Assembly (NCBI RefSeq): GCF_022045235.1
Contig: NW_027266264.1
Location: 13,206,001-13,270,000, forward strand
Source: Haliotis cracherodii
Lineage: Eukaryota
Length of the DNA stretch: 64,000 bases
Reading direction: 5' to 3'
A model generated the notes under the pieces. The model was not told the origin of the DNA, searched no databases, and saw nothing but the letters and a program-made list of their open reading frames with translations. The translations under genes were made by a program, and so were the position numbers. Positions 6,141-35,884 of the stretch are shown here, piece by piece; the first letter of the stretch is position 1, and each line of letters begins with the position of its first letter.

Positions 6141-7094
6141 TCCCTGTTTACAGGAAGAGATTCAGACTTTGTACTGTTTCATCACACATGTGTCATGTAA
6201 AAAACCCATGATACTGTTATGAGTAAACAAAGGCACATTTGAGTGAGTAAGATAGTTAAAATGTAAAGTCACATCGGCGGTCTTTCAGTATGTTCACTTG
6301 ACGAGCACAGCTCAGGCATCCCAACCATGTGGGAGCAGCGCCAAAAGTGACGCATGCGTAAACACCCTTTTAAAACCGCACTTAGTAACCTTCGAGCCTT
6401 ATTCCACATGGAAGAGATTTTGTTTGTTCGGGTTGACACTTGTTTGCCTTTGCATGTGACGCGTGCCACCGGTGGGGCAGGATGCGCTCACCTTCTCGCG
6501 AACACCTGGTATCATCACTATTTGATAGTGATTCATACACACGTGCTCATGATATGGTCGAATCGTACAATCGACTCTGCTTTCAGCAGATATTTCTTGT
6601 GGCTATTAAAAGGGTTTTGTCGCTTTTATTTCACACAAGGTCGATGTATCGTTTTTGAAGTATTAATATTCTTGCGGAAATATTTCATGTTTTAATGTTT
6701 CAGTATTTTAATGTTTCCTGAAGTAAATAAAAATAAAATAGACTTCAAAACTGAAGACGTTTATTTCTTCAACATCCTCGAAATAAGGAAACCATGTTTG
6801 CTTGTATCATTTGACCTCAGTGAACAATCAGATTCGGCTTCATCAGTTACTTATCAGTTCCGCTAATCACTTGTATGATTAGCAATGACGAACAGGAACT
6901 TGTTTCCTTGTTTACGGGAAGACACTCAGACTTTGTACTGTTTCATCACATGTGTGCCGTATAAAGTATCAGTGTCATGAGCTTTAAACAAAGGCACGAT
7001 TAAGTGAGTGAGTGATTTCAAATGTAAGGTCATATTGGCAGTATTTCAGGCCTGCGTCTAAACCATGTTGAGCATATCATGACACCTTTTTAAA

Positions 7095-25920: not shown

Positions 25921-27697
25921 GGGAAAGCAGCTGATATGTAAGACACGGGAGGAAAGTTTGGAACATAAACAGAACACATTGTCATGTGATGAACGCACAA
26001 CAAACATGTTCAATCATCGGTTAAATGTTTTGCTGTTCATTCCATGCGTTACGGAACGATGACACTTGGATGAATAAATCGTTACAATTTGTTGATAATC
26101 ACAACTTGACGGATGGCTGCCGCTATACAACGATCAATGAAGAGAGACGTGACTTATTGTGACGTTATACATTTATGATACATGTAACACCGTCAAGAAG
26201 CACCAAGGACACGACTTCAGAAACTGCAACGTTGTCTTCTCTGGACCACCTGAGACTGAGAGATTGTCTGCACAAGATGGGTCCACGACAGGAACTGCTA
26301 TGCCTTGTACCGAGACATCCCCATAAAGCCCTATTCTATCTATTTAATTTATCTGTTATCACCTGCTACATCCCCAGTTGACATATTAATAACTTTTAAG
26401 GCATACAGCGACCTGATATAATTTTCAGTAATCTCGACTATCAACATGNNNNNNNNNNNNNNNNNNNNNNNNNNNNNNNNNNNNNNNNNNNNNNNNNNNN
26501 NNNNNNNNNNNNNNNNNNNNNNNNNNNNNNNNNNNNNNNNNNNNNNNNNNNNNNNNNNNNNNNNNNNNNNNNNNNNNNNNNNNNNNNNNNNNNNNNNNNN
26601 NNNNNNNNNGTTACATATATCACATGTAAAATAAGCATCCTGAAACACATGGACGACTAGTAACCAACTGTTCTTCATATGCTGATATTAACACATGTTG
26701 CAGTGGGATCGAAACGATGACTGGAAGGATAGGCTGTTTAGATGTATGTATGTGGAAGACAGCACGGATTGTAACATTGTACCACTAGTTTACCATTATA
26801 ACATCGTAACACCAGTTTACCACGAATCTGATTCTAATGAACGTCATTCATTATCATGCCAACATATCAGATTCAACTCATGTCAGAACTCAACAGATGT
26901 CACTGTATTCCAAGTATCACTTTACACATACACGTAGAAAAGGATGTTTTGCTATTTAGTATCTCAAATAACATGTTTATCACACCCAGAAACCGCAATA
27001 AATATTCAAAATCGATATCTTCAGGATCACGAGTAGCACAGCTACAAGTAAATTTGTAAACGGAAGGTCGAGTCTCCCACTCATTGGTCGCTCGACCTAA
27101 TGTTTTCCAGTAACGACTGCTCGTAAATGCAACATATTGATAGTGATATCATGAATATTTTATGCACGGATAAGTTGTAATGGATAAGTTGCAAACGTTT
27201 CATTCGAGTTATATACGTGCATGTCAATATTTTACTGTCTTTTGATGTTAAGGTGATCTAATTCTTGTGATTTTCAAATTGAAACATTGTTAGACATATT
27301 TATGCTTCACAATTGTATCAGGAAATAAATAAAATCTCACTCTGTTGTCTCTTGTTATCACATACGTATAAACCAACATCTGTCCATCAAAATAATACAC
27401 AGACTGGAAACATTTCTCCTTTCATCGACTCGTGTTTCAATATTTACATTTAGTACTAACTACTAAATGACTTTATCGCGCGTATCCAAACCATGGGCTA
27501 ATTACGTCTGTAACCCAATCACCCCTCGTAACTCAATCACCCCGGGCCACCACTCGGCACCGTGCCCGGGGAATAATCCCGCGCAAGCATCATCCCGCCC
27601 TTTGTTAGTCCGTCATTCGCGAGCAGCCCTTCCCCAAGTACACACGTGTGTCACTGTATCTAATCGCTTTCCCATTTTACGTTTCCTTTGTACCCAG

Positions 27698-27832
27698 TCG
27701 CGAACGTTTCGCCGATTACGCTTTGAATACCATCTATTCCAACACTCGCCGTATCGCATTTACACAATCGCGACCGTTTCGCCGATTACGCTTTGAATAC
27801 CATCTATTTCAGCACTCGCCGTATCGCATTTA
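27698..27832 (+). repeat. 2 x 70-bp direct repeat in the 5' leader of the retrotransposon
   Basis: TCGCGA(A/C)CGTTTCGCCGATTACGCTTTGAATACCATCTATT... at 27698 and 27768. Confidence 0.9.
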
Positions 27833-27910
27833 TTCCGCTCTACTCCCGAACTTCACCCTCGGGACAATTTACGCTTGTGGAATACCAACTCACCACCCCG
27901 ACTTTTCGTG

Positions 27911-29056
27911 ATGCCTCCCAAGAGAAGAGCAACCGTCAACCACAAGCTTGTGAGGGGAGCCAAGCAGGCCAGGACAACCAGAAGACAAACCCCGGGAGTA
28001 CACATTGTACTGGAGACAACAGCTGATGGCGAGTCTGCCAATTACGGAAATATCGAAGGTGGCAACAGAATTAACGTACAATCGGCGCAGCTTGTAAATG
28101 CCGCGCAGGTTGCCAACTCGGCTACCCAGGTAAACGAGCAACTGGGAAAAATACTCCAGTTGCTGGAACATACAGCGCCCGGCCCGGTTAGCGCAAACCA
28201 ACAGGTAAGGCTTGGTTTTAGTTCTCCCGCCATTTCGCCCAACATAGGGAGAATCCCCGATGCGCACAACGAGGCCGACGGTGACGCGGCCCCAGCCAAT
28301 CACATCGCCGGATACGGGGATTCCCTTTCCTTCCGTGCGGACGGAATAGACGCGCACGTCAAACAACAGGTGAGGGAAAAAATCTGGCCTGGCGAGTATG
28401 TCGACCTCGGCACAATACTACCAAACACCGAGGGAAGTCACGAGGACGGTACGATTACCATGGCGTATGACTCCTCAGGTAAGGTAATTTTTAAACCAAT
28501 AAAACAGCAACCAAAGCGCCTGTCCCTGGCAAGCTGGACTTCAGCTTTCCACATTTTCATGTGTACTTACGTTAGTAGGCACTCCGAGGTCCGCACAACC
28601 CAAGGGTTGCTGTCCTACATGGAAACCATAAGAACGGCGGCACTTCGATTCGGGGGGGATGCCTGGTCAACCTACGACCAACAATTCCGACACAGAATGT
28701 CAAGGGACCCCTCACGACGCTGGGACAACATCGACGGGGAGTTGTGGCTGAAGTACATGGTAACACAGCCGGTACTACAACCAGAATCAGGCGGACGGGG
28801 CGCAATGACACGCGTACAGGGGGACATCGCCAGTCAGGTATGCTGGGATTTCAATAAATTTGGCTGTAGCAGGGTCAACTGTAAGTACACTCACAAATGC
28901 GGTAAGTGTGGCAAACATTCCCATAGCTCTAGGACCTGCTTTCGAGGGAATGGGGTCCAACCGACCCCATACAAGCCCAATCAGCCCTTTCCTAACAGAA
29001 AACCAGCCGGCAAGGCAGGTAAATTCAGTGGCCCCTTCCCCCGTGGATCTCAATGA
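27911..29056 (+). CDS. gag: Gag-like ORF1 of the YR retrotransposon
   Basis: Starts MPPKRR. Carries KIW.GEYVDL, W..YD.QFR and C-terminal CWDFNKFGCSRVNCKYTH + CGKCGKHSHSSRTC zinc fingers, typical of DIRS/Ngaro ORF1. Confidence 0.88.
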   Translation: MPPKRRATVNHKLVRGAKQARTTRRQTPGVHIVLETTADGESANYGNIEGGNRINVQSAQLVNAAQVANSATQVNEQLGKILQLLEHTAPGPVSANQQVRLGFSSPAISPNIGRIPDAHNEADGDAAPANHIAGYGDSLSFRADGIDAHVKQQVREKIWPGEYVDLGTILPNTEGSHEDGTITMAYDSSGKVIFKPIKQQPKRLSLASWTSAFHIFMCTYVSRHSEVRTTQGLLSYMETIRTAALRFGGDAWSTYDQQFRHRMSRDPSRRWDNIDGELWLKYMVTQPVLQPESGGRGAMTRVQGDIASQVCWDFNKFGCSRVNCKYTHKCGKCGKHSHSSRTCFRGNGVQPTPYKPNQPFPNRKPAGKAGKFSGPFPRGSQ

Positions 29057-30646
29057 AATGGCACCCTGGTTACGCCAATATGCTAGGGTCAATTACAGAG
29101 ATGCAAATTATTTATGGGTAGGTTTTAGCTTTGGCTTTAAGCTCGAGTTCTAGGGAAGCCGCACGGGTCGCCTGGCACGAAACTTGCGATCAGCCACACA
29201 CCAAGATACGGCAGGCTACGTGAAACAAAAACTACAAAAGGAAGTCGACCTTGGCAGGATGGCGGGCCCCTTCAAGGACACCCCCCTAGACAACCTCCAA
29301 GTATCCCCAATAGGCCTGGTGACCAAGAAGCAGCCAGGATATGGTCAGCACCTGGGTAAGCATGCGGAGGAATTCCGTCTAATTCACCATCTATCCTATC
29401 CCAGGGGTAAATCTATAAATGACTTCATAGACACAGAGGCCTGCTCCGTTGTGTACGCCAGATTTGATGAAGCTACCCAGATGGTGCAACAACTGGGAAA
29501 GGGAGCATTACTAGCAAAATTCGACATTCAGTCGGCCTTTAGAATTATACCAGTCCACCCATCCGATTTCGAGCTGCTAGGCATCAGATTCGAATTGAGT
29601 TCTATTTCGATAAATGCTTACCATTTGGCTGCTCCATATCTTGCGCCATATTTGAAACGTTTAGTACCTTCTTGCAATGGTGCATGCAATCGCATCTTCC
29701 AACGTGTCCGGTCATGCATTACCTGGATGACTTCCTAACGGGGGGCAGAGCAGGCACCAGCCACTGCTCAGACAACCTCAACGGATGCGTGAATACACTT
29801 GAACAGCTTGGGGTTCCTATTGCGCACGACAAGACGGTGGGCCCCACAACCAAACTGACATTCCTAGGGCTGGAAATCGACACCATTGCAATGCAGATCA
29901 GAATCCCAGAGCCCAAGATCAAGGAGGCAACAAGGGAAATCCAAGACATCCTGTCAACAGGTAACATCAAGGTCACAAAAAGGGCCCTTCAGTCCCTCAT
30001 AGGCAAGCTTAACTTTATGTGCAGGGCTATACCAATGGCAAGGGCATTCAGCCGCAGGCTAATCGATCTGCTTAGCAAAGGTAAGCAACCATTTCACCAC
30101 ATTAGGATTACCAGCTGGGTCAAGGAAGACCTACAAATGTGGTTAACATTTCTTACGAGTTATAACGGCATTTCAGTGTTTCAGGACCAACTATGGGTGG
30201 ACAGCGATTTCCTCCAGCTGTTTTCAGACGCAGCGGGTGGCGCCGGCTTTGGGGCCTACATGCAGGGCAAATGGTTTAACGGCGCATTGCCACCCCAGTG
30301 GGTGACGGATGGAACTACACGGGACTTGACGCTCCTGGAGCTGTTCCCCATCACACTGGCCATCCAAATCTGGGGCAAGCAACTCGCAAACAAAAAGGTC
30401 CTCTTTTACTGCGACAACCAAGCCGTCGTAACAATAATCAACAAGCAGTCAACCAAGGCCCCCAGAGTGATGAGCCTACTCCGTCGCCTAATCCTGCAGT
30501 GTCTCCGATATAATATTATGTTTAAGGCAAAGTATGTATGTTCCACTGCTAACACTATTGCCGATGCTCTCTCGAGGTTTCAGCTCAAACGCTTCCGAGA
30601 GGATCAGAACCCCACACCTATCCCGTGCAACATATGGCTGATCTGA
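28860..30646 (+). pseudogene. pol: Reverse transcriptase-RNase H ORF with one in-frame stop and one frameshift
   Basis: GFSFGFKLEF*G (TAG 29151-29153), GRMAGPF, SPIGLV.KK, FRLIHHLSYP, AKFDIQSAF; frameshift near 29598 (should read FYFDKCLPFG); HYLDDF; RNase H motifs FSDAA, LELFPI, CDNQAVV, IADALSR. Start position uncertain. Confidence 0.92.
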
Positions 30647-31557
30647 GGCAGGAAGCCGGCAGACTCCTACAACAATCTCTGTCTACTAATACATGGGCCA
30701 CTTACCAAACAGGCATCAATGCCTTGCACCAGTTCCGGTCCGCACACCAGCTACAAGAGGTGTGGCCAGTCCCGCTGGATCAGGTCGTAAACTTTATTGC
30801 TTATCTGTCAGTCACTCACCACTCCCCTAACACAGTCAAGACTTACATTGCAGCGCTGTCTTCACACCACAAATTCCACGGGCTCACCGACTGTACAAAC
30901 CATTTCCTGGTAGGCAAGATTGTAACCGGCTTACACAAATCAGCGGGCCGACCAGACACCAGAAAACCGATCACTGCAGATCTGCTGCAGGTAGTAACCA
31001 ACAATCTGCCTCACGTATGCTCATCAGCATATGAAGCCAGGCTGTTCAAGGCAGTCTACTGCACAGCATTCTTCGGTTTCTTTAGGGTTAGCGAACTCGT
31101 CCAAACTGGACCCTCAAAAACAGGTTGCGCCATCCAGAATTTAAGCTTCTCGGGCAACCCCCAGCAGCTTTCAATCCATTTACCACACTCAAAGTCTGAT
31201 CAGTACAGGATGGGGACAACAGTTACAATGTCACCTATACCAGGTAATCCGCTATGTCCGGTAGTCGCCATCAAGCACTACCTGGAGGCGCGCCCCTCCG
31301 GCCCACAACATGCATTCGTCCACTTTGACCATTCCCCCGTTACAAGGTACCAATTCCAGGCACTCCTAAAAAAGGCCTTAGCACACAGCAACATAAACAC
31401 GGCCTGCTATTCTTCGCACTCCTTCCGCATTGGGGCAGCCACATCAGCAGCCATGAACGGGGTGCCTGAACACCTCGTACAACAATACGGCAGGTGGAAA
31501 TCAGATTGCTACAATGCTTACATACGCTTACCAACAAATTCAATGTTGCACAATTAA
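30634..31557 (+). CDS. Tyrosine recombinase (phage integrase family), intact
   Basis: Catalytic set FRVSE (R), SKSDQ (K), HSFR, GRW and Y in DCYNAY; overlaps the end of RT-RH. Confidence 0.95.
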   Translation: MADLRQEAGRLLQQSLSTNTWATYQTGINALHQFRSAHQLQEVWPVPLDQVVNFIAYLSVTHHSPNTVKTYIAALSSHHKFHGLTDCTNHFLVGKIVTGLHKSAGRPDTRKPITADLLQVVTNNLPHVCSSAYEARLFKAVYCTAFFGFFRVSELVQTGPSKTGCAIQNLSFSGNPQQLSIHLPHSKSDQYRMGTTVTMSPIPGNPLCPVVAIKHYLEARPSGPQHAFVHFDHSPVTRYQFQALLKKALAHSNINTACYSSHSFRIGAATSAAMNGVPEHLVQQYGRWKSDCYNAYIRLPTNSMLHN

Positions 31558-31604
31558 ATCAAATAGTCTTTCATGGTACTTACTACACTTCTTATTGTTT
31601 ACAG

Positions 31605-32149
31605 TTTGGATGGTGGGATCCAGCTACATGGCCAGGGCTAGGCAGTACTTGCTCCTGAAGGGCACCAGCCCGAACCAACCGAGGATGCTATGGCTGGCAC
31701 GAGGGGGGATGAGGTGGAAGGAGCTGGACACCATTCTGGATGCACAGGTCAAGGCGACACGGCGTAGCCCCAGAGCCCTCATCATTCACCTGGGCTCCGA
31801 CGACCTGTGCTCGGTCAAAGGCAGCCAACTCTACCTTGACATGGTGGCATCAGTCCTTCGGATACAACTCCAGCTTCCTGACACCAAGATCATCGTATCC
31901 TCAATGCTGCCCAGGCGCTACTGGCACGATGCCAGGGATCCACGAAAGATCGAGGGGATGCGGAAGAATATCAACCGCCGACTGACCAACCGAGTCAAAG
32001 AGCTCGGCGGTACAACAGTGCCACATCCCCAGATCCTGGCATCTGACAAGACATGGTACGCCTGGGAGGGCGTCCACCTCAGTGACAAAGGACTGTGTGT
32101 GTTTACGGACAATTTATTGCATGCCCTGGCGCTCGTTTTGCGCCAGTAA
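31605..32149 (+). CDS. SGNH/GDSL hydrolase-like ORF of the retrotransposon
   Basis: Blocks VGSS, RGG, IHLGSDD and EGVHL correspond to GDS / G / GxND / DGxH. Begins after a strong splice acceptor (AG at 31603-31604); first ATG is 31610. Confidence 0.85.
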
Positions 32150-33527
32150 GGATATTATCTCCACAGGTTAGTGTTTCCTTTCAGTACATAAGCAAGCCGG
32201 GCAACAATGCTATCTCCGCGTATCGCGTGGCCGTGGGTGTGGGGTAGCACTCTGGTACTTTGTGGCGGGGTTCTTGTGGGCTACACTGCTAGTAACAAAT
32301 TAACTTGCTTCCAAATTAATACTCGTGCTTAAGGCTACCTGCTTTTCAGCGGGAACCTTTCCGGGGTTACCTGCTTCTCAGTGGGAACCTTGTCTTCCCG
32401 ACTTTTCAGCCGGGGAATCGTAGAATAACATACGTTGGGGCAAACAGTTGCCACGTATATGGGCCCGGCGGCGGAAGTCGTCTTGTCAAGCGGTAGCTGA
32501 CAGTTGGGTCCGCGGCGGGAGCCGCACAATGGTTTTGCAAATGGGGCCGGGCAGTGGGATCTGCTTTGGCCGTCTACCTGGGGCCGGGCAGCGGCAGTCT
32601 GACTTAGGCCAGCAGCGTGGAGCTGCTTTTGGCAACGTGGGAGTTGCCAAGCAATGGTAGCGTTTAAATATGCTACCGTGGGGGCCGGACAGCGGTAGCA
32701 GTCTCAGGCCAGCAGCGCTAGCTGCAATCGCCGTCGGCCACGCGCGTGGCCATGGCAACGGTAGCATTTTTGGTATATACAATTAGCAGCTAAGTAGCCC
32801 ACTAGTACCTGCACACCCTCGGCCATTTAACCCAATCTCATCTTCTGTTTTATTACAGGCACGGGCACCAACGGCTCGGTGGCCCGTGCCTCTCCTTGGC
32901 ATATCGCGGGATAATTGATATCAAAAGCCACCTTAGTGAGATTATATCTGTACGGAAGCGTAGTAGGGCACGGTGAATTGTTTTGTCAAAGTATCTGCCA
33001 CGAAGGACTTATTATCTCCTACGTAGGACTTACTATGGACTAGAATAACTATATCCTACGTAGGACTTAGTATGGACTAGAATAACCATCTCCTACGTGG
33101 GACTTAGTATCTCCTACGTAGGAGATAGTAAGTCCTACGTAGGAAATAGAATATAACCTTTTATTCCTCCATAAAGAAGAGTACAAAAAAAGCAGAAACT
33201 AATAGATGAACATTTATCAGAACAACATATTATTTTGCATGAAATATGCAGAATGGTAATGCTGATGTATTGAGAGTTAGTTGAACACCATTTTAAACAT
33301 TGGCTTGACATATTTTACACACACTCGTGCAAAGTCATCAGCATCTTTGTCACATAGTCTGTAATCTGTTCTACAAGACAACATGCATTCAGTGAGCTTT
33401 GCTGAGTCCATACCATGCAGGTAGCAGCTAAAGTCGACATCACCGATATTGATCAACTCCATCCAGAGCTGATCACGAATATCGCACGTACATCGCACGT
33501 GTTATCACATACGTATAAACCAACATC

Positions 33528-35166
33528 ATCATCGTATCCTCAATGCTGCCCAGGCGCTACTGGCACGATGCCAGGGATCCACGAAAGATCGAGGGGATGC
33601 GGAAGAATATCAACCGCCGACTGACCAACCGAGTCAAAGAGCTCGGCGGTACAACAGTGCCACATCCCCAGATCCTGGCATCTGACAAGACATGGTACGC
33701 CTGGGAGGGCGTCCACCTCAGTGACAAAGGACTGTGTGTGTTTACGGACAATTTATTGCATGCCCTGGCGCTCGTTTTGCGCCAGTAAGGATATTATCTC
33801 CACAGGTTAGTGTTTCCTTTCAGTACATAAGCAAGCCGGGCAACAATGCTATCTCCGCGTATCGCGTGGCCGTGGGTGTGGGGTAGCACTCTGGTACTTT
33901 GTGGCGGGGTTCTTGTGGGCTACACTGCTAGTAACAAATTAACTTGCTTCCAAATTAATACTCGTGCTTAAGGCTACCTGCTTTTCAGCGGGAACCTTTC
34001 CGGGGTTACCTGCTTCTCAGTGGGAACCTTGTCTTCCCGACTTTTCAGCCGGGGAATCGTAGAATAACATACGTTGGGGCAAACAGTTGCCACGTATATG
34101 GGCCCGGCGGCGGAAGTCGTCTTGTCAAGCGGTAGCTGACAGTTGGGTCCGCGGCGGGAGCCGCACAATGGTTTTGCAAATGGGGCCGGGCAGTGGGATC
34201 TGCTTTGGCCGGCTACCTGGGGCCGGGCAGCGGCAGTCTGACTTAGGCCAGCAGCGTGGAGCTGCTTTTGGCAACGTGGGAGTTGCCAAGCAATGGTAGC
34301 GTTTAAATATGCTACCGTGGGGGCCGGACAGCGGTAGCAGTCTCAGGCCAGCAGCGCTAGCTGCAATCGCCGTCGGCCACGCGCGTGGCCATGGCAACGG
34401 TAGCATTTTTGGTATATACAATTAGCAGCTAAGTAGCCCACTAGTACCTGCACACCCTCGGCCATTTAACCCAATCTCATCTTCTGTTTTATTACAGGCA
34501 CGGGCACCAACGGCTCGGTGGCCCGTGCCTCTCCTTGGCATATCGCGGGATAATTGATATCAAAAGCCACCTTAGTGAGATTATATCTGTACGGAAGCGT
34601 AGTAGGGCACGGTGAATTGTTTTGTCAAAGTATCTGCCACGAAGGACTTATTATCTCCTACGTAGGACTTACTATGGACTAGAATAACTATATCCTACGT
34701 AGGACTTAGTATGGACTAGAATAACCATCTCCTACGTGGGACTTAGTATCTCCTACGTAGGAGATAGTAAGTCCTACGTAGGAAATAGAATATAACCTTT
34801 TATTCCTCCATAAAGAAGAGTACAAAAAAAGCAGAAACTAATAGATGAACATTTATCAGAACAACATATTATTTTGCATGAAATATGCAGAATGGTAATG
34901 CTGATGTATTGAGAGTTAGTTGAACACCATTTTAAACATTGGCTTGACATATTTTACACACACTCGTGCAAAGTCATCAGCATCTTTGTCACATAGTCTG
35001 TAATCTGTTCTACAAGACAACATGCATTCAGTGAGCTTTGCTGAGTCCATACCATGCAGGTAGCAGCTAAAGTCGACATCACCGATATTGATCAACTCCA
35101 TCCAGAGCTGATCACGAATATCGCACGTACATCGCACGTGTTATCACATACGTATAAACCAACATC
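33528..35166 (+). repeat. 1639-bp tandem duplicate of 31889-33527 (retrotransposon 3' end plus host flank)
   Basis: Constant 1639 offset (e.g. ORF ends 32149 and 33788); one substitution seen (32573 T vs 34212 G). Confidence 0.95.
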
Positions 35167-35884
35167 TGTCCATTAAAATAATACACAGACTGGAAACATT
35201 TCTCCTTTCATCGACTCGTGTTTCAATATTGGATATCAAAAGCCACCTTTGAGAGATTTTATCTGTACGGAAGCGTAGTAGGGCACGGTGAATTGTTTTG
35301 TCAAAGTATCTGCTACGTAGGACTTAGTATGGCCTAGAATTACTATCTCCTACGTAGGACTTACTATGGACTAGAATAACTATCTCCTACGTGGAAAGGT
35401 GGGGCATGGGTCTTCTTCTACTTTTGCATAATGCAAATACTTGTTCTGGTTCATAACATGAAATCGTGTGGTTGACATAGAGTGACCGTTTTATAATTAC
35501 AAGATTAAACGCTAGATACAATATATCATATCTAATTTCATCGATGTATGTACATGGTTTTCCCTAGGCTCTAATATCGGACCGTTATCGTGACTGTGTC
35601 TACTAGAAACGTTTTGGAGATCTTTGCATCCCCTCCCACTCCTCACAGAAACACTGGATGTTAGGCTACTTAAATATACCAACACTGACAGCAAACTAGA
35701 TTTCACTCCCTACATGCGATCGATTTGACCAGAAGCCACGGATGTGGTGTNNNNNNNNNNNNNNNNNNNNNNNNNNNNNNNNNNNNNNNNNNNNNNNNNN
35801 NNNNNNNNNNNNNNNNNNNNNNNNNNNNNNNNNNNNNNNNNNNNNNNNNNNNNNNNNNNNNNNNNNNNNNNNNNNNNNNNNNGT

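What the first reader, a model, noticed from the sequence alone, without database searches (positions are those of the whole stretch)
27446..27489. Joined ends of the YR retrotransposon fold into an attC-like hairpin with a bubble at the crossover
Seen: joining the 3' end (32896-32914), the shared TT and the 5' end gives TTGGcATAtCGCGgGATAA-tta-CATTTAGTA [loop CTAAC] TACTAAATG-act-TTATCgCGCGTATCCAA. The arms pair over ~25 bp: a perfect 9-bp inner stem (27447-27455 with 27461-27469) and an outer stem (32896-32914 with 27473-27489) carrying two extrahelical bases and one mismatch. An unpaired 3-nt bubble separates the stems and contains the TT where recombination with the host occurred. Known: DIRS-order elements are thought to integrate from a circular cDNA using their tyrosine recombinase. 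Integron attC sites and CTX phage attP are folded single-stranded YR substrates with paired arms, an unpaired spacer and, for attC, extrahelical bases. Inference: this lineage may build its recombination site by folding a single-stranded circle junction, with the junction-complementary sequence at the 5' tip rather than in an internal ICR. The same pairing could bring the two ends together for circularisation.
Basis: partly seen in the sequence, partly recalled or inferred. Interest (0 to 1): 0.88.

Follow-up and report, generated by a model that had tools for sequence, protein, structure and literature searches.

The report
Hairpin at Ngaro retrotransposon repeat junction
When the two ends of this abalone jumping gene are joined they form a two-stem DNA hairpin that is kept in distant relatives and sits exactly where the element joins host DNA, which gives a testable clue to how recombinase-carrying retrotransposons integrate.

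Summary
The pairing is real. The joined ends fold at -18 kcal/mol (z = -6.4). The same sequence also exists contiguously in the genome.

The element is a young Ngaro-type tyrosine-recombinase (YR) retrotransposon of Haliotis cracherodii with split direct repeats. The window copy is a frameshifted A-int-B derivative, so the claim of "no internal copy of the junction" is wrong.

The junction has an outer stem, a bubble of about 3 nt and an inner hairpin of 8-9 bp. It recurs at the B|A boundary in:
- four abalone families (55-71% YR identity);
- two further abalone sites and one metagenome contig that match the pattern;
- a metagenomic clade at about 30% identity with unrelated sequence.

Eight of 19 pairs show compensatory changes.

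The exchange point is not a shared TT. It lies after a TA(A/T) triplet at the end of the outer-left arm. Targets carry that triplet on the 5' side only, and 3' flanks are random.

Most likely this is the recombinase's attachment site. The geometry and the single-point joints favour use in folded form, but double-stranded use or an RNA/cDNA role is not excluded. The attC-like extrahelical bases are not conserved.

The parts
27440..27443 (+). Host letters ATAT directly 5' of the element. This is the target triplet T-A-(T/A) that mimics the end of repeat B.
   Evidence: In 22 independent insertions, position -2 is A in 22, -3 is T in 20 and -1 is T in 18. Family 3 shows TAA in 10 and TAT in 3 of 13.
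27444..27674 (+). Repeat A (231 bp). It is the only A in the window copy. In full copies it recurs as A2 directly after B1.
   Evidence: A1 and A2 are 100% identical in 8 of the 10 full-length long copies compared.
27444..27446 (+). Left side of the bubble (TTA), the first letters of the element.
   Evidence: Copy L006 has CTA here and also at its internal B1|A2 junction.
27447..27469 (+). Inner hairpin: 9-bp stem with a 5-nt loop. The core CATTTAG/CTAAATG is invariant in the mollusc families.
   Evidence: The pattern is found 155 times in the genome against 0 for the reversed control.
27470..27472 (+). Right side of the bubble (ACT).
   Evidence: The length of 3 nt is kept in seven aligned mollusc-type junctions while the letters vary.
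27473..27489 (+). Outer-right arm, which pairs with the end of repeat B.
27680..27819 (+). Two tandem 70-bp units in the leader between A and gag.
   Evidence: D2, 86% identity.
27875..29056 (+). Gag-like ORF (393 aa) with a weak CCCH zinc-finger match.
29028..30646 (+). RT/RNase H gene. It is intact (544 aa) in copy L003 but interrupted by a frameshift near 29594 in the window copy.
   Evidence: (RVT_1 E = 4e-15).
30625..31557 (+). Tyrosine recombinase with the catalytic R, K, HxxR, W and Y all present.
   Evidence: PF00589, 34 bits. One search shows invariant R154, K190, H265, R268, W291 and Y299.
31514..32149 (+). GDSL/SGNH hydrolase-like ORF, as in vertebrate Ngaro elements.
   Evidence: 33.6 bits in L003, cut-off 32.9. 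PMC9210276.
32261..32914 (+). Repeat B (654 bp). The element ends at ...GGGATAA.
32858..32890 (+). GC-rich hairpin inside B, just upstream of the outer-left arm.
   Evidence: z = -4.4. Counterparts with other letters occur in three more abalone families.
32896..32914 (+). Outer-left arm. The crossover lies directly after 32914.
33528..35166 (+). Tandem duplicate (99.9%) of 31889-33527: the element's last 1,026 bp plus 613 bp of host flank. It is not an A2-x-B2 module.
35220..35240 (+). Paralogous empty site in the next unit of the host's ~677-bp tandem repeat.

Best explanation
The 'joined ends' are the B|A junction of an Ngaro-type retrotransposon with split direct repeats (gag, RT/RNase H, tyrosine recombinase, GDSL hydrolase).

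Shown:
- Full copies are A1-int-B1-A2-x-B2 and hold the junction as contiguous DNA (B1|A2).
- The junction is a compound palindrome: an outer stem made of the end of B and a site 30 nt into A, a bubble of about 3 nt per side, and an inner 8-9-bp hairpin.
- This architecture is kept, with compensatory changes, from abalone families to relatives with about 30% recombinase identity.
- Element and host are joined at one phosphodiester, directly after a TA(A/T) triplet that closes the outer-left arm.
- Targets carry the same triplet on that side only.

Inferred:
- The palindrome is the attachment site on which the element's recombinase acts. The enzyme would bind the arm 5' of the scissile bond in both partners.
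- The two outer arms lie 29-31 bp apart in duplex DNA, and the crossover is not inside the 8-7-8 inner palindrome. The site is therefore probably used folded, as a hairpin on single-stranded cDNA or as a cruciform.
- In the folded form the outer and inner stems would act as two stacked binding boxes. A single strand exchange would be completed by replication, as in integron attC or CTX phage.
- In a linear single strand the same pairing would also bring the 3' end of B next to the 5' end of A.

My odds: attachment site of the recombinase about 0.6, and within that, use in folded single-stranded form about 0.35 overall.
For: - Sequence and fold.
- Split repeats and a contiguous B1|A2 in at least 12 loci.
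- Same architecture in abalone families at 71%, 58% and 55% recombinase identity.
- Same architecture in metagenome relatives. L047 is 49% identical. L097, L099, L101, L106 and L126 are 30-33% identical, with wholly different letters, and the hairpin lies exactly at the B1 end.
- Covariation on seven aligned junctions: 91% of cells pair against 79.5 +/- 2.2 in shuffles and about 33% when the partners are slid. Eight pairs change on both sides.
- Chance rate: 13 such compound palindromes in 567 kb of relatives against 1-3 in shuffles, and at least 6 of the 13 lie directly after a B1 repeat end (one B boundary, L074, is cut by its contig end).
- Crossover and one-sided target. The 3' end is ...ATAA followed by any letter in 22 of 22. 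No products of a staggered 6-8-bp overlap are seen.
- Recombinase catalytic residues are intact.
- DIRS-1 makes single-stranded cDNA intermediates and needs its junction-complementary region (PMC7192593). The same paper cites a trinucleotide-at-the-junction rule for DIRS-like elements.
Against: - Inverted repeats bound by one protein covary in duplex DNA too, so covariation does not prove folding.
- No biochemical or intermediate data exist for any Ngaro element.
- A 3-nt bubble is shorter than the 6-8-nt spacer of known recombinase sites.
- The bulged bases of family 1 are not conserved, so that part of the attC analogy fails.
- The sense strand folds better in 10 of 13 junctions and holds most of the G.T pairs. 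This points to RNA or plus-strand DNA rather than the antisense cDNA seen in DIRS-1.
- A closed circle made from a full copy would hold two identical junctions. Yet 0 of 22 insertions are opened at B1|A2, which no simple circle model explains.
- The primary Ngaro papers could not be read, so the palindrome may already be described.
Confidence: 0.6

Rival explanations
1. It is a conventional double-stranded recombination site on a duplex circular cDNA. The four arms (outer-left, inner-left, inner-right, outer-right) would be protein-binding boxes arranged as a palindrome and never extruded. The recombinase cuts next to the outer-left box, and the inner palindrome is an accessory or second binding site.
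For: - Symmetric boxes covary in duplex sites as well.
- The inner 8-7-8 palindrome has the dimensions of a classical core.
- The accepted model for DIRS-order elements ends in a duplex circle (PMC7192593).
Against: - The crossover lies 11 nt outside the inner spacer.
- The partner arm of the cleaved box is 29-31 bp away.
- Both host joints sit at the same bond, and 0 of 22 insertions are of the type a staggered overlap would give half the time.
- The target is recognisable on one side only.
Confidence: 0.2
2. The structure works at the RNA or cDNA level and not as a recombinase substrate. One option is a self-priming fold like that of Tf1, where a primer:PBS duplex encloses a stem-loop and is cut at its edge. 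Another is a clamp that holds the two ends of a linear single-stranded cDNA together for end repair or circle closure. The B|A boundary would then mark a nucleic-acid end made by RNase H or RT.
For: - The sense strand is the more stable in 10 of 13 junctions. G.T pairs run about 7-8 against 2, and they are tolerated in RNA.
- Outer duplex, inner stem-loop and a cut at the duplex edge resemble the Tf1 self-primer (from my own knowledge, not tested here).
- DIRS-1 cDNA is mostly linear and single-stranded.
- This role is not exclusive of the attachment-site reading.
Against: - The target carries the same TA(A/T) as the end of B. That is the signature of a sequence-reading recombinase and not of a cDNA end.
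- Family 1 prefers a T at -1 where its own end has A. This argues against microhomology priming.
- Extending the B end on the A arm would copy the palindrome's complement and not the observed junction letters.
Confidence: 0.17
3. It is chance or a neutral remnant: short leftover terminal inverted repeats of a DIRS1-like ancestor, with no present role.
For: DIRS1-like elements have inverted terminal repeats, so a short relic is conceivable.
Against: - z = -6.4.
- The architecture is kept at about 30% protein identity with different letters.
- Compensatory changes are present.
- The excess over shuffles is about five- to tenfold, and the sites are placed exactly at B ends.
Confidence: 0.03

Closest known systems
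Ngaro superfamily (DIRS order) retrotransposons with split direct repeats A1-[ORFs]-B1A2B2
   Same: - Gag, RT/RNase H, tyrosine recombinase, no methyltransferase.
- Extra SGNH/GDSL hydrolase ORF, as in frog and fish Ngaro.
- Split direct repeats downstream of the recombinase, and no target-site duplication.
   Different: - A unique spacer x (76-317 bp) lies between A2 and B2 in every relative seen here.
- The compound palindrome at B|A is not mentioned in any paper I could read.
- Many copies are A-int-B or A-x-B derivatives.
DIRS-1 circle junction and internal complementary region (Cappello model; Malicki et al. 2020)
   Same: - An internal copy of the joined ends preserves the junction sequence.
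- A short family-specific triplet at the junction is also found in the target.
- Single-stranded cDNA intermediates are documented for DIRS-1.
   Different: - DIRS-1 has long inverted terminal repeats and a complementary ICR.
- Here the internal copy has the same polarity (B1|A2). Complementarity is limited to 17-19 nt plus a hairpin within the junction itself.
Integron attC sites (folded bottom strand recombined by IntI)
   Same: - An imperfect palindrome folds into two stacked paired boxes separated by an unpaired spacer.
- Structure is conserved more than sequence.
- The crossover lies at a conserved triplet at a box edge.
- Joints sit at a single point, with no overlap products.
   Different: - Extrahelical bases are not conserved here.
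- The bubble is 3 nt.
- The recombinase is not an IntI, and its extra domain was not examined.
- It is a eukaryotic retroelement.
- Single-strand use is unproven.
CTX phage attP(+): a folded single strand recombined with dif by XerCD
   Same: - A forked hairpin of two inverted sites in a single-stranded genome mimics a duplex site.
- One strand exchange is completed by replication.
   Different: - CTX uses host recombinases and a specific chromosomal site.
- Here the enzyme is element-encoded and the target is a loose TA(A/T).
Tf1/Tf2 self-priming structure (primer:PBS duplex enclosing the U5-IR stem-loop)
   Same: - An outer duplex between distant segments of one strand encloses a short hairpin.
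- A cut at the edge of the outer duplex defines an end.
   Different: - The Tf1 structure is at the RNA 5' end and is cut by RNase H to prime DNA synthesis.
- Here the site coincides with the host-element exchange point and with a target motif.
VIPER and its short derivative SIRE in Trypanosoma cruzi
   Same: A2, a short exclusive region and B2 together form a unit that also occurs alone, like the solo A-x-B units found here (PMC6681497).
   Different: It is a kinetoplastid lineage, and nothing is reported about a junction palindrome.

Membership tests
Ngaro-like retrotransposon (DIRS order) | Reverse transcriptase and RNase H | tested here: met
   In the intact copy L003, RVT_1 scores E = 4e-15 with weak RNase H matches. 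The window copy is frameshifted.
Ngaro-like retrotransposon (DIRS order) | Tyrosine recombinase instead of a DDE integrase | tested here: met
   PF00589 scores 34 bits against a cut-off of 27.1. R, K, HxxR, W and Y are invariant in the alignment.
Ngaro-like retrotransposon (DIRS order) | Split direct repeats A1 ... B1 A2 B2 downstream of the recombinase | tested here: met
   Met in at least 12 copies of the family and in families 2 and 3. The window copy itself has only A and B.
Ngaro-like retrotransposon (DIRS order) | No methyltransferase domain | tested here: met
   Pfam scans of all ORFs show none.
Ngaro-like retrotransposon (DIRS order) | Optional SGNH/GDSL hydrolase ORF after the recombinase | tested here: met
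   Lipase_GDSL_2 scores 33.6 bits against a cut-off of 32.9 in L003. This ORF is described for frog Ngaro (PMC9210276).
DIRS1-like element | Long inverted terminal repeats plus an internal complementary region, and a methyltransferase domain | tested here: not met
   Only 17-19 nt of terminal complementarity were found, with no inverted internal region and no methyltransferase.
attC-type folded recombination site | An imperfect palindrome that folds into two paired boxes around an unpaired spacer, with structure conserved more than sequence | tested here: met
attC-type folded recombination site | Conserved extrahelical bases that set strand choice | tested here: not met
   The bulges of family 1 have no counterpart in families 2, 3 and 55 or in L047.
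attC-type folded recombination site | Only one strand is recombined and replication resolves the product | not testable with these tools
   The evidence is indirect only: single-point joints and a one-sided target motif.
Canonical duplex core site (loxP, FRT, dif type) | Two inverted arms flank a 6-8-bp overlap within which strands are exchanged | tested here: not met
   The inner 8-7-8 palindrome has the right size. However, the host-element joints lie 11 nt outside its spacer, and the outer arms are 29-31 bp apart.
Tf1-type self-primer | The RNA is cleaved at the duplex edge and the released end primes cDNA synthesis | not testable with these tools
   Only contigs of uncertain library type were available.

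The most novel reading that the evidence does not exclude
Ngaro-type retrotransposons integrate through a folded single-stranded hairpin formed by their own repeat junction. The element-encoded tyrosine recombinase would cut one strand at the stem-bubble edge and exchange it with a duplex TA(A/T) target, and replication would finish the job. This would be a eukaryotic counterpart of integron attC and CTX-phage integration. [quoted passage not shown]
Probability: 0.3. Interest if true: 0.85.

Novelty: new member of a known kind. Interest (0 to 1): 0.62.

Why it matters
No integration mechanism has been shown experimentally for any tyrosine-recombinase retrotransposon, and the recombinase's substrate is unknown.

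This work pins the exchange point to one bond. It shows a structured site around that bond that is conserved and covaries across deep divergence. It also shows that the joints lack the footprints of a classical staggered exchange.

That turns a vague model ('a circle recombines with the target') into defined oligonucleotide substrates and clear predictions. It also corrects the element's anatomy: the family has split direct repeats, a spacer x, and frequent A-int-B and A-x-B derivatives. This matters for annotating such elements in mollusc genomes.

Tried and rejected
Readings tested and rejected:
- Shared-TT crossover. Only 3 of 22 3' flanks start with TT, and family 3's 3' flanks do not share its bubble triplet.
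- Crossover inside a shared ATA triplet. It predicts ATAATTA at the left joint, but most copies read ATATTTA.
- Tn916-like exchange with a heterologous 6-7-bp overlap. It predicts half of the insertions starting inside the hairpin and ending with extra junction letters. None of 22 do.
- Inner palindrome as the crossover core. The joints lie outside it.
- Microhomology priming by the target 3' end. Family 1 prefers a terminal mismatch.
- Short A-int-B copies as a separately transposing lineage. They are scattered among long copies on 13 informative sites, which means at least four or five independent origins. There are no fixed B1/B2 differences that would tell homologous from site-specific deletion.

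- Pieces taken for the 47-54%, 56-66%, 74% and 89-90% abalone families did not contain a junction.
- Read laying returned only contigs of uncertain library type. These gave no transcript ends and no proof of circles.
- The primary Ngaro papers are not held in the library.
- No paper in the library links Ngaro with a hairpin or palindrome.

The short consensus line printed by DNA alignment for the 70-nt junction was not used.

Full report
**The observation.**
- The element begins TTA (27444-27446). A perfect 9-bp/5-nt-loop hairpin follows (27447-27469), then ACT, then a 17-nt arm (27473-27489).
- That arm pairs with the last 19 nt of the element (32896-32914, ending GGGATAA).
- As single-stranded DNA the joined sequence folds at -18.2 kcal/mol against -5.2 +/- 2.0 for shuffles (z = -6.4). 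The complementary strand gives -15.2 (z = -5.4).

**What the element is.**
- The ORFs are a gag-like protein, RT/RNase H, a tyrosine recombinase (YR) with all catalytic residues, and a GDSL/SGNH hydrolase. There is no methyltransferase. This is the gene set of Ngaro-like elements, including the hydrolase known from frogs (PMC9210276).
- The genome is that of the black abalone, Haliotis cracherodii. The recombinase is 99% identical to a protein of that species, and a hit's contig length equals that of contig C1.
- An earlier scan note on the same genome described the same gene set.

- A search of the whole genome found more than 20 copies at about 99% identity.
- In most of them the 3' end is followed at once by a second copy of the first 231 bp (A2). 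A unique 288-317-bp spacer (x) comes next, then a second copy of the last 655 bp (B2).
- The family therefore has split direct repeats, A1-int-B1-A2-x-B2. The 'in-silico joined ends' stand as real contiguous DNA at B1|A2.
- The window copy and six others are A-int-B only. On 13 informative sites these short copies are scattered among long ones, so they arose several times.
- Solo A-x-B units with normal joints also exist. They recall SIRE of VIPER (PMC6681497).
- The window copy is also defective, with a frameshift in RT.

**Where the crossover is.**
- In 22 independent insertions the 3' end is always ...GGGATAA followed by any letter. TT follows in 3 of 22.
- The 5' flank is conserved: A at -2 in 22 of 22, T at -3 in 20, T at -1 in 18.
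- Family 3 behaves alike. Its B ends in TATAA, its 5' flanks end in TAA (10) or TAT (3) of 13, and its 3' flanks are unrelated to its bubble triplet.
- The target therefore shares TA(A/T) with the end of B, and exchange occurs directly after it, at the edge between outer stem and bubble. This is the trinucleotide rule already proposed for DIRS-like elements (PMC7192593), not a shared TT.
- The paralogous empty site in the window (35220-35240) is compatible with either reading for this one copy.
- Copy L006 carries CTA instead of TTA both at its 5' end and at B1|A2. This is direct evidence that the two are copied from one another during a cycle.

**Conservation.**
- The genome holds many diverged families.
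- Families at 71%, 58% and 55% recombinase identity show the same design at B|A. B ends in ATAA. A 3-nt bubble follows, then an inner stem on the core CATTTAGT/ACTAAATG with a 5-8-nt loop, 3 nt more, and an arm beginning TTAT.
- The outer arms differ but stay complementary:
  - family 1: CGCGGGATAA with TTATCGCGCG
  - family 2: CCTGCAATAA with TTATTGCAGG
  - family 3: CCTTATATAA with TTATGTTAGG
  - family 55: GTTTCAATAA with TTATTGAAAT
- On seven aligned junctions (alignment A2), 91% of cells pair against 79.5 +/- 2.2 in shuffles and about 33% with slid partners. Eight of 19 pairs change on both sides, including the eighth inner pair (T-A to C-G).
- The core pattern occurs 155 times in the genome against 0 for its reversed control.
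- Metagenome contigs encoding relatives extend this. L047 (49% identity) has the mollusc design.
- A clade at 30-33% identity has the same split repeats with a spacer x, and B ending in GTTAA. It has a compound palindrome with quite different letters exactly at the B1 end. The clear cases are L097, L099, L101, L106 and L126. L084, L096 and L119 have looser versions, and L117 has only a simple hairpin.
- Strictly defined compound palindromes number 13 in 567 kb of these loci against 1-3 in shuffles. At least six of the 13 lie directly after a B1 repeat end, although the B boundary of L074 is cut by its contig end.
- The bubble letters vary as if random, except a T facing a T next to the outer stem in five of the seven aligned mollusc-type junctions.
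- The bulged bases of family 1 are not conserved.

**How it most likely works.**
The coincidence of a conserved structured site, the exact exchange point and a matching target triplet makes this the element's attachment site for its own recombinase (about 0.6). Three facts argue that it is not a classical duplex core:
- The inner palindrome has classical 8-7-8 dimensions, but the crossover lies 11 nt outside its spacer.
- The arm symmetric to the cleaved one lies 29-31 bp away.
- Both host joints lie at one bond, with none of the products expected from a staggered overlap, and the target motif is one-sided.

In folded form the site becomes a quasi-continuous stem with two boxes and a small bubble at the cut. 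A single strand exchange completed by replication would give exactly these joints. DIRS-1 is known to make single-stranded cDNA. This step is inference (about 0.35 overall).

Several points weigh against it:
- Covariation alone cannot tell folded from duplex use.
- The sense strand folds better in 10 of 13 junctions and holds most G.T pairs. That fits RNA or plus-strand DNA better than antisense cDNA.
- None of 22 insertions is opened at the identical B1|A2 site, which simple circle models do not explain.

An RNA or cDNA role remains a live rival or an additional role. It could be a Tf1-like self-priming fold or a clamp joining the ends of a linear strand.

**Reads.**
Four public runs hold the sequence, but only as contigs of uncertain library type. 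One contig runs from B through A into the leader, and another from A through x into B. Neither proves circles or transcripts. Two other coded organisms hold about 43% of the sampled words, so close relatives of the family occur in other species.

**Novelty and limits.**
- The element is a new member of a known kind.
- I found the junction palindrome, its covariation and the single-point, one-sided joints in no paper available to me. The primary Ngaro papers could not be read.
Named-species relatives and several abalone families therefore remain unexamined.

Noticed in passing
window 31889-35166 and 35139-35395: The element's last 1,026 bp plus 613 bp of host flank are duplicated in tandem (33528-35166, 99.9%). 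The host DNA here is itself a ~677-bp tandem repeat, and its next unit offers a paralogous empty site.
   Followed up: partly
L003:7223-7539; L031:7552-7709; L033:704-960; metagenome loci L084-L126: A unique spacer x (76-317 bp, different in each family) lies between A2 and B2 in every split-repeat relative seen. Its role is unknown. The usual A1-B1A2B2 formula does not mention it.
   Followed up: partly
L128:445-1634 (minus strand); L129:633-1814: Solo A-x-B units of about 1.2 kb have normal joints (ATAT or ATAA before TTA, and GGGATAA then host). They are SIRE-like derivatives or integrated mini-circles. A copy on contig C5 carries two A-x-B modules in tandem (x at 31734587 and 31735764).
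   Followed up: partly
L006:1510-1512 and 6998-7000: One copy has CTA instead of TTA as its first three letters, both at its 5' end and at its internal B1|A2 junction. The two sites are therefore copied from one another.
   Followed up: no
window 32858-32890; matching places in L031, L033 and L042: A GC-rich hairpin lies about 20-55 nt before the end of repeat B in four abalone families, with different letters (z from -2.3 to -4.4). It is not seen in the distant clade.
   Followed up: partly
window 32992-33148: The host flank holds nested palindromic repeats built on TCCTACGTAGGA.
   Followed up: no
window about 29594 and 30600: Relative to copy L003, the window copy has a frameshift in the RT/RNase H gene and a 15-nt in-frame gap just before the recombinase ORF.
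   Followed up: partly
L084, L096, L097, L101 and L106, around their B1 ends: In the distant clade the motif GTAG, then 0-2 letters, then GTTAA closes repeat B. It recurs in the loop plus right arm of the inner hairpin, as if a second copy of the cleaved box lay inside the hairpin.
   Followed up: no
G000:C67:43037179-43082300: Five recombinase genes of the 47%-identity family lie in a tandem array, four of the five about 9.8 kb apart. The pieces fetched for this family (L034, L035) showed neither split repeats nor the hairpin.
   Followed up: partly
runs X5-X22 laid on L003:4300-8300: Two other coded organisms hold about 43% of the 31-letter words of B1-A2-x-B2 at 95-99% likeness. Near-identical relatives of this family therefore occur in other species.
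   Followed up: no
run X1 contig on L003:6347-7222: One contig runs from B1 through A and continues into the leader that follows A1, not into x. It is either a tandem or circle joint or an assembler's path through the repeat.
   Followed up: no
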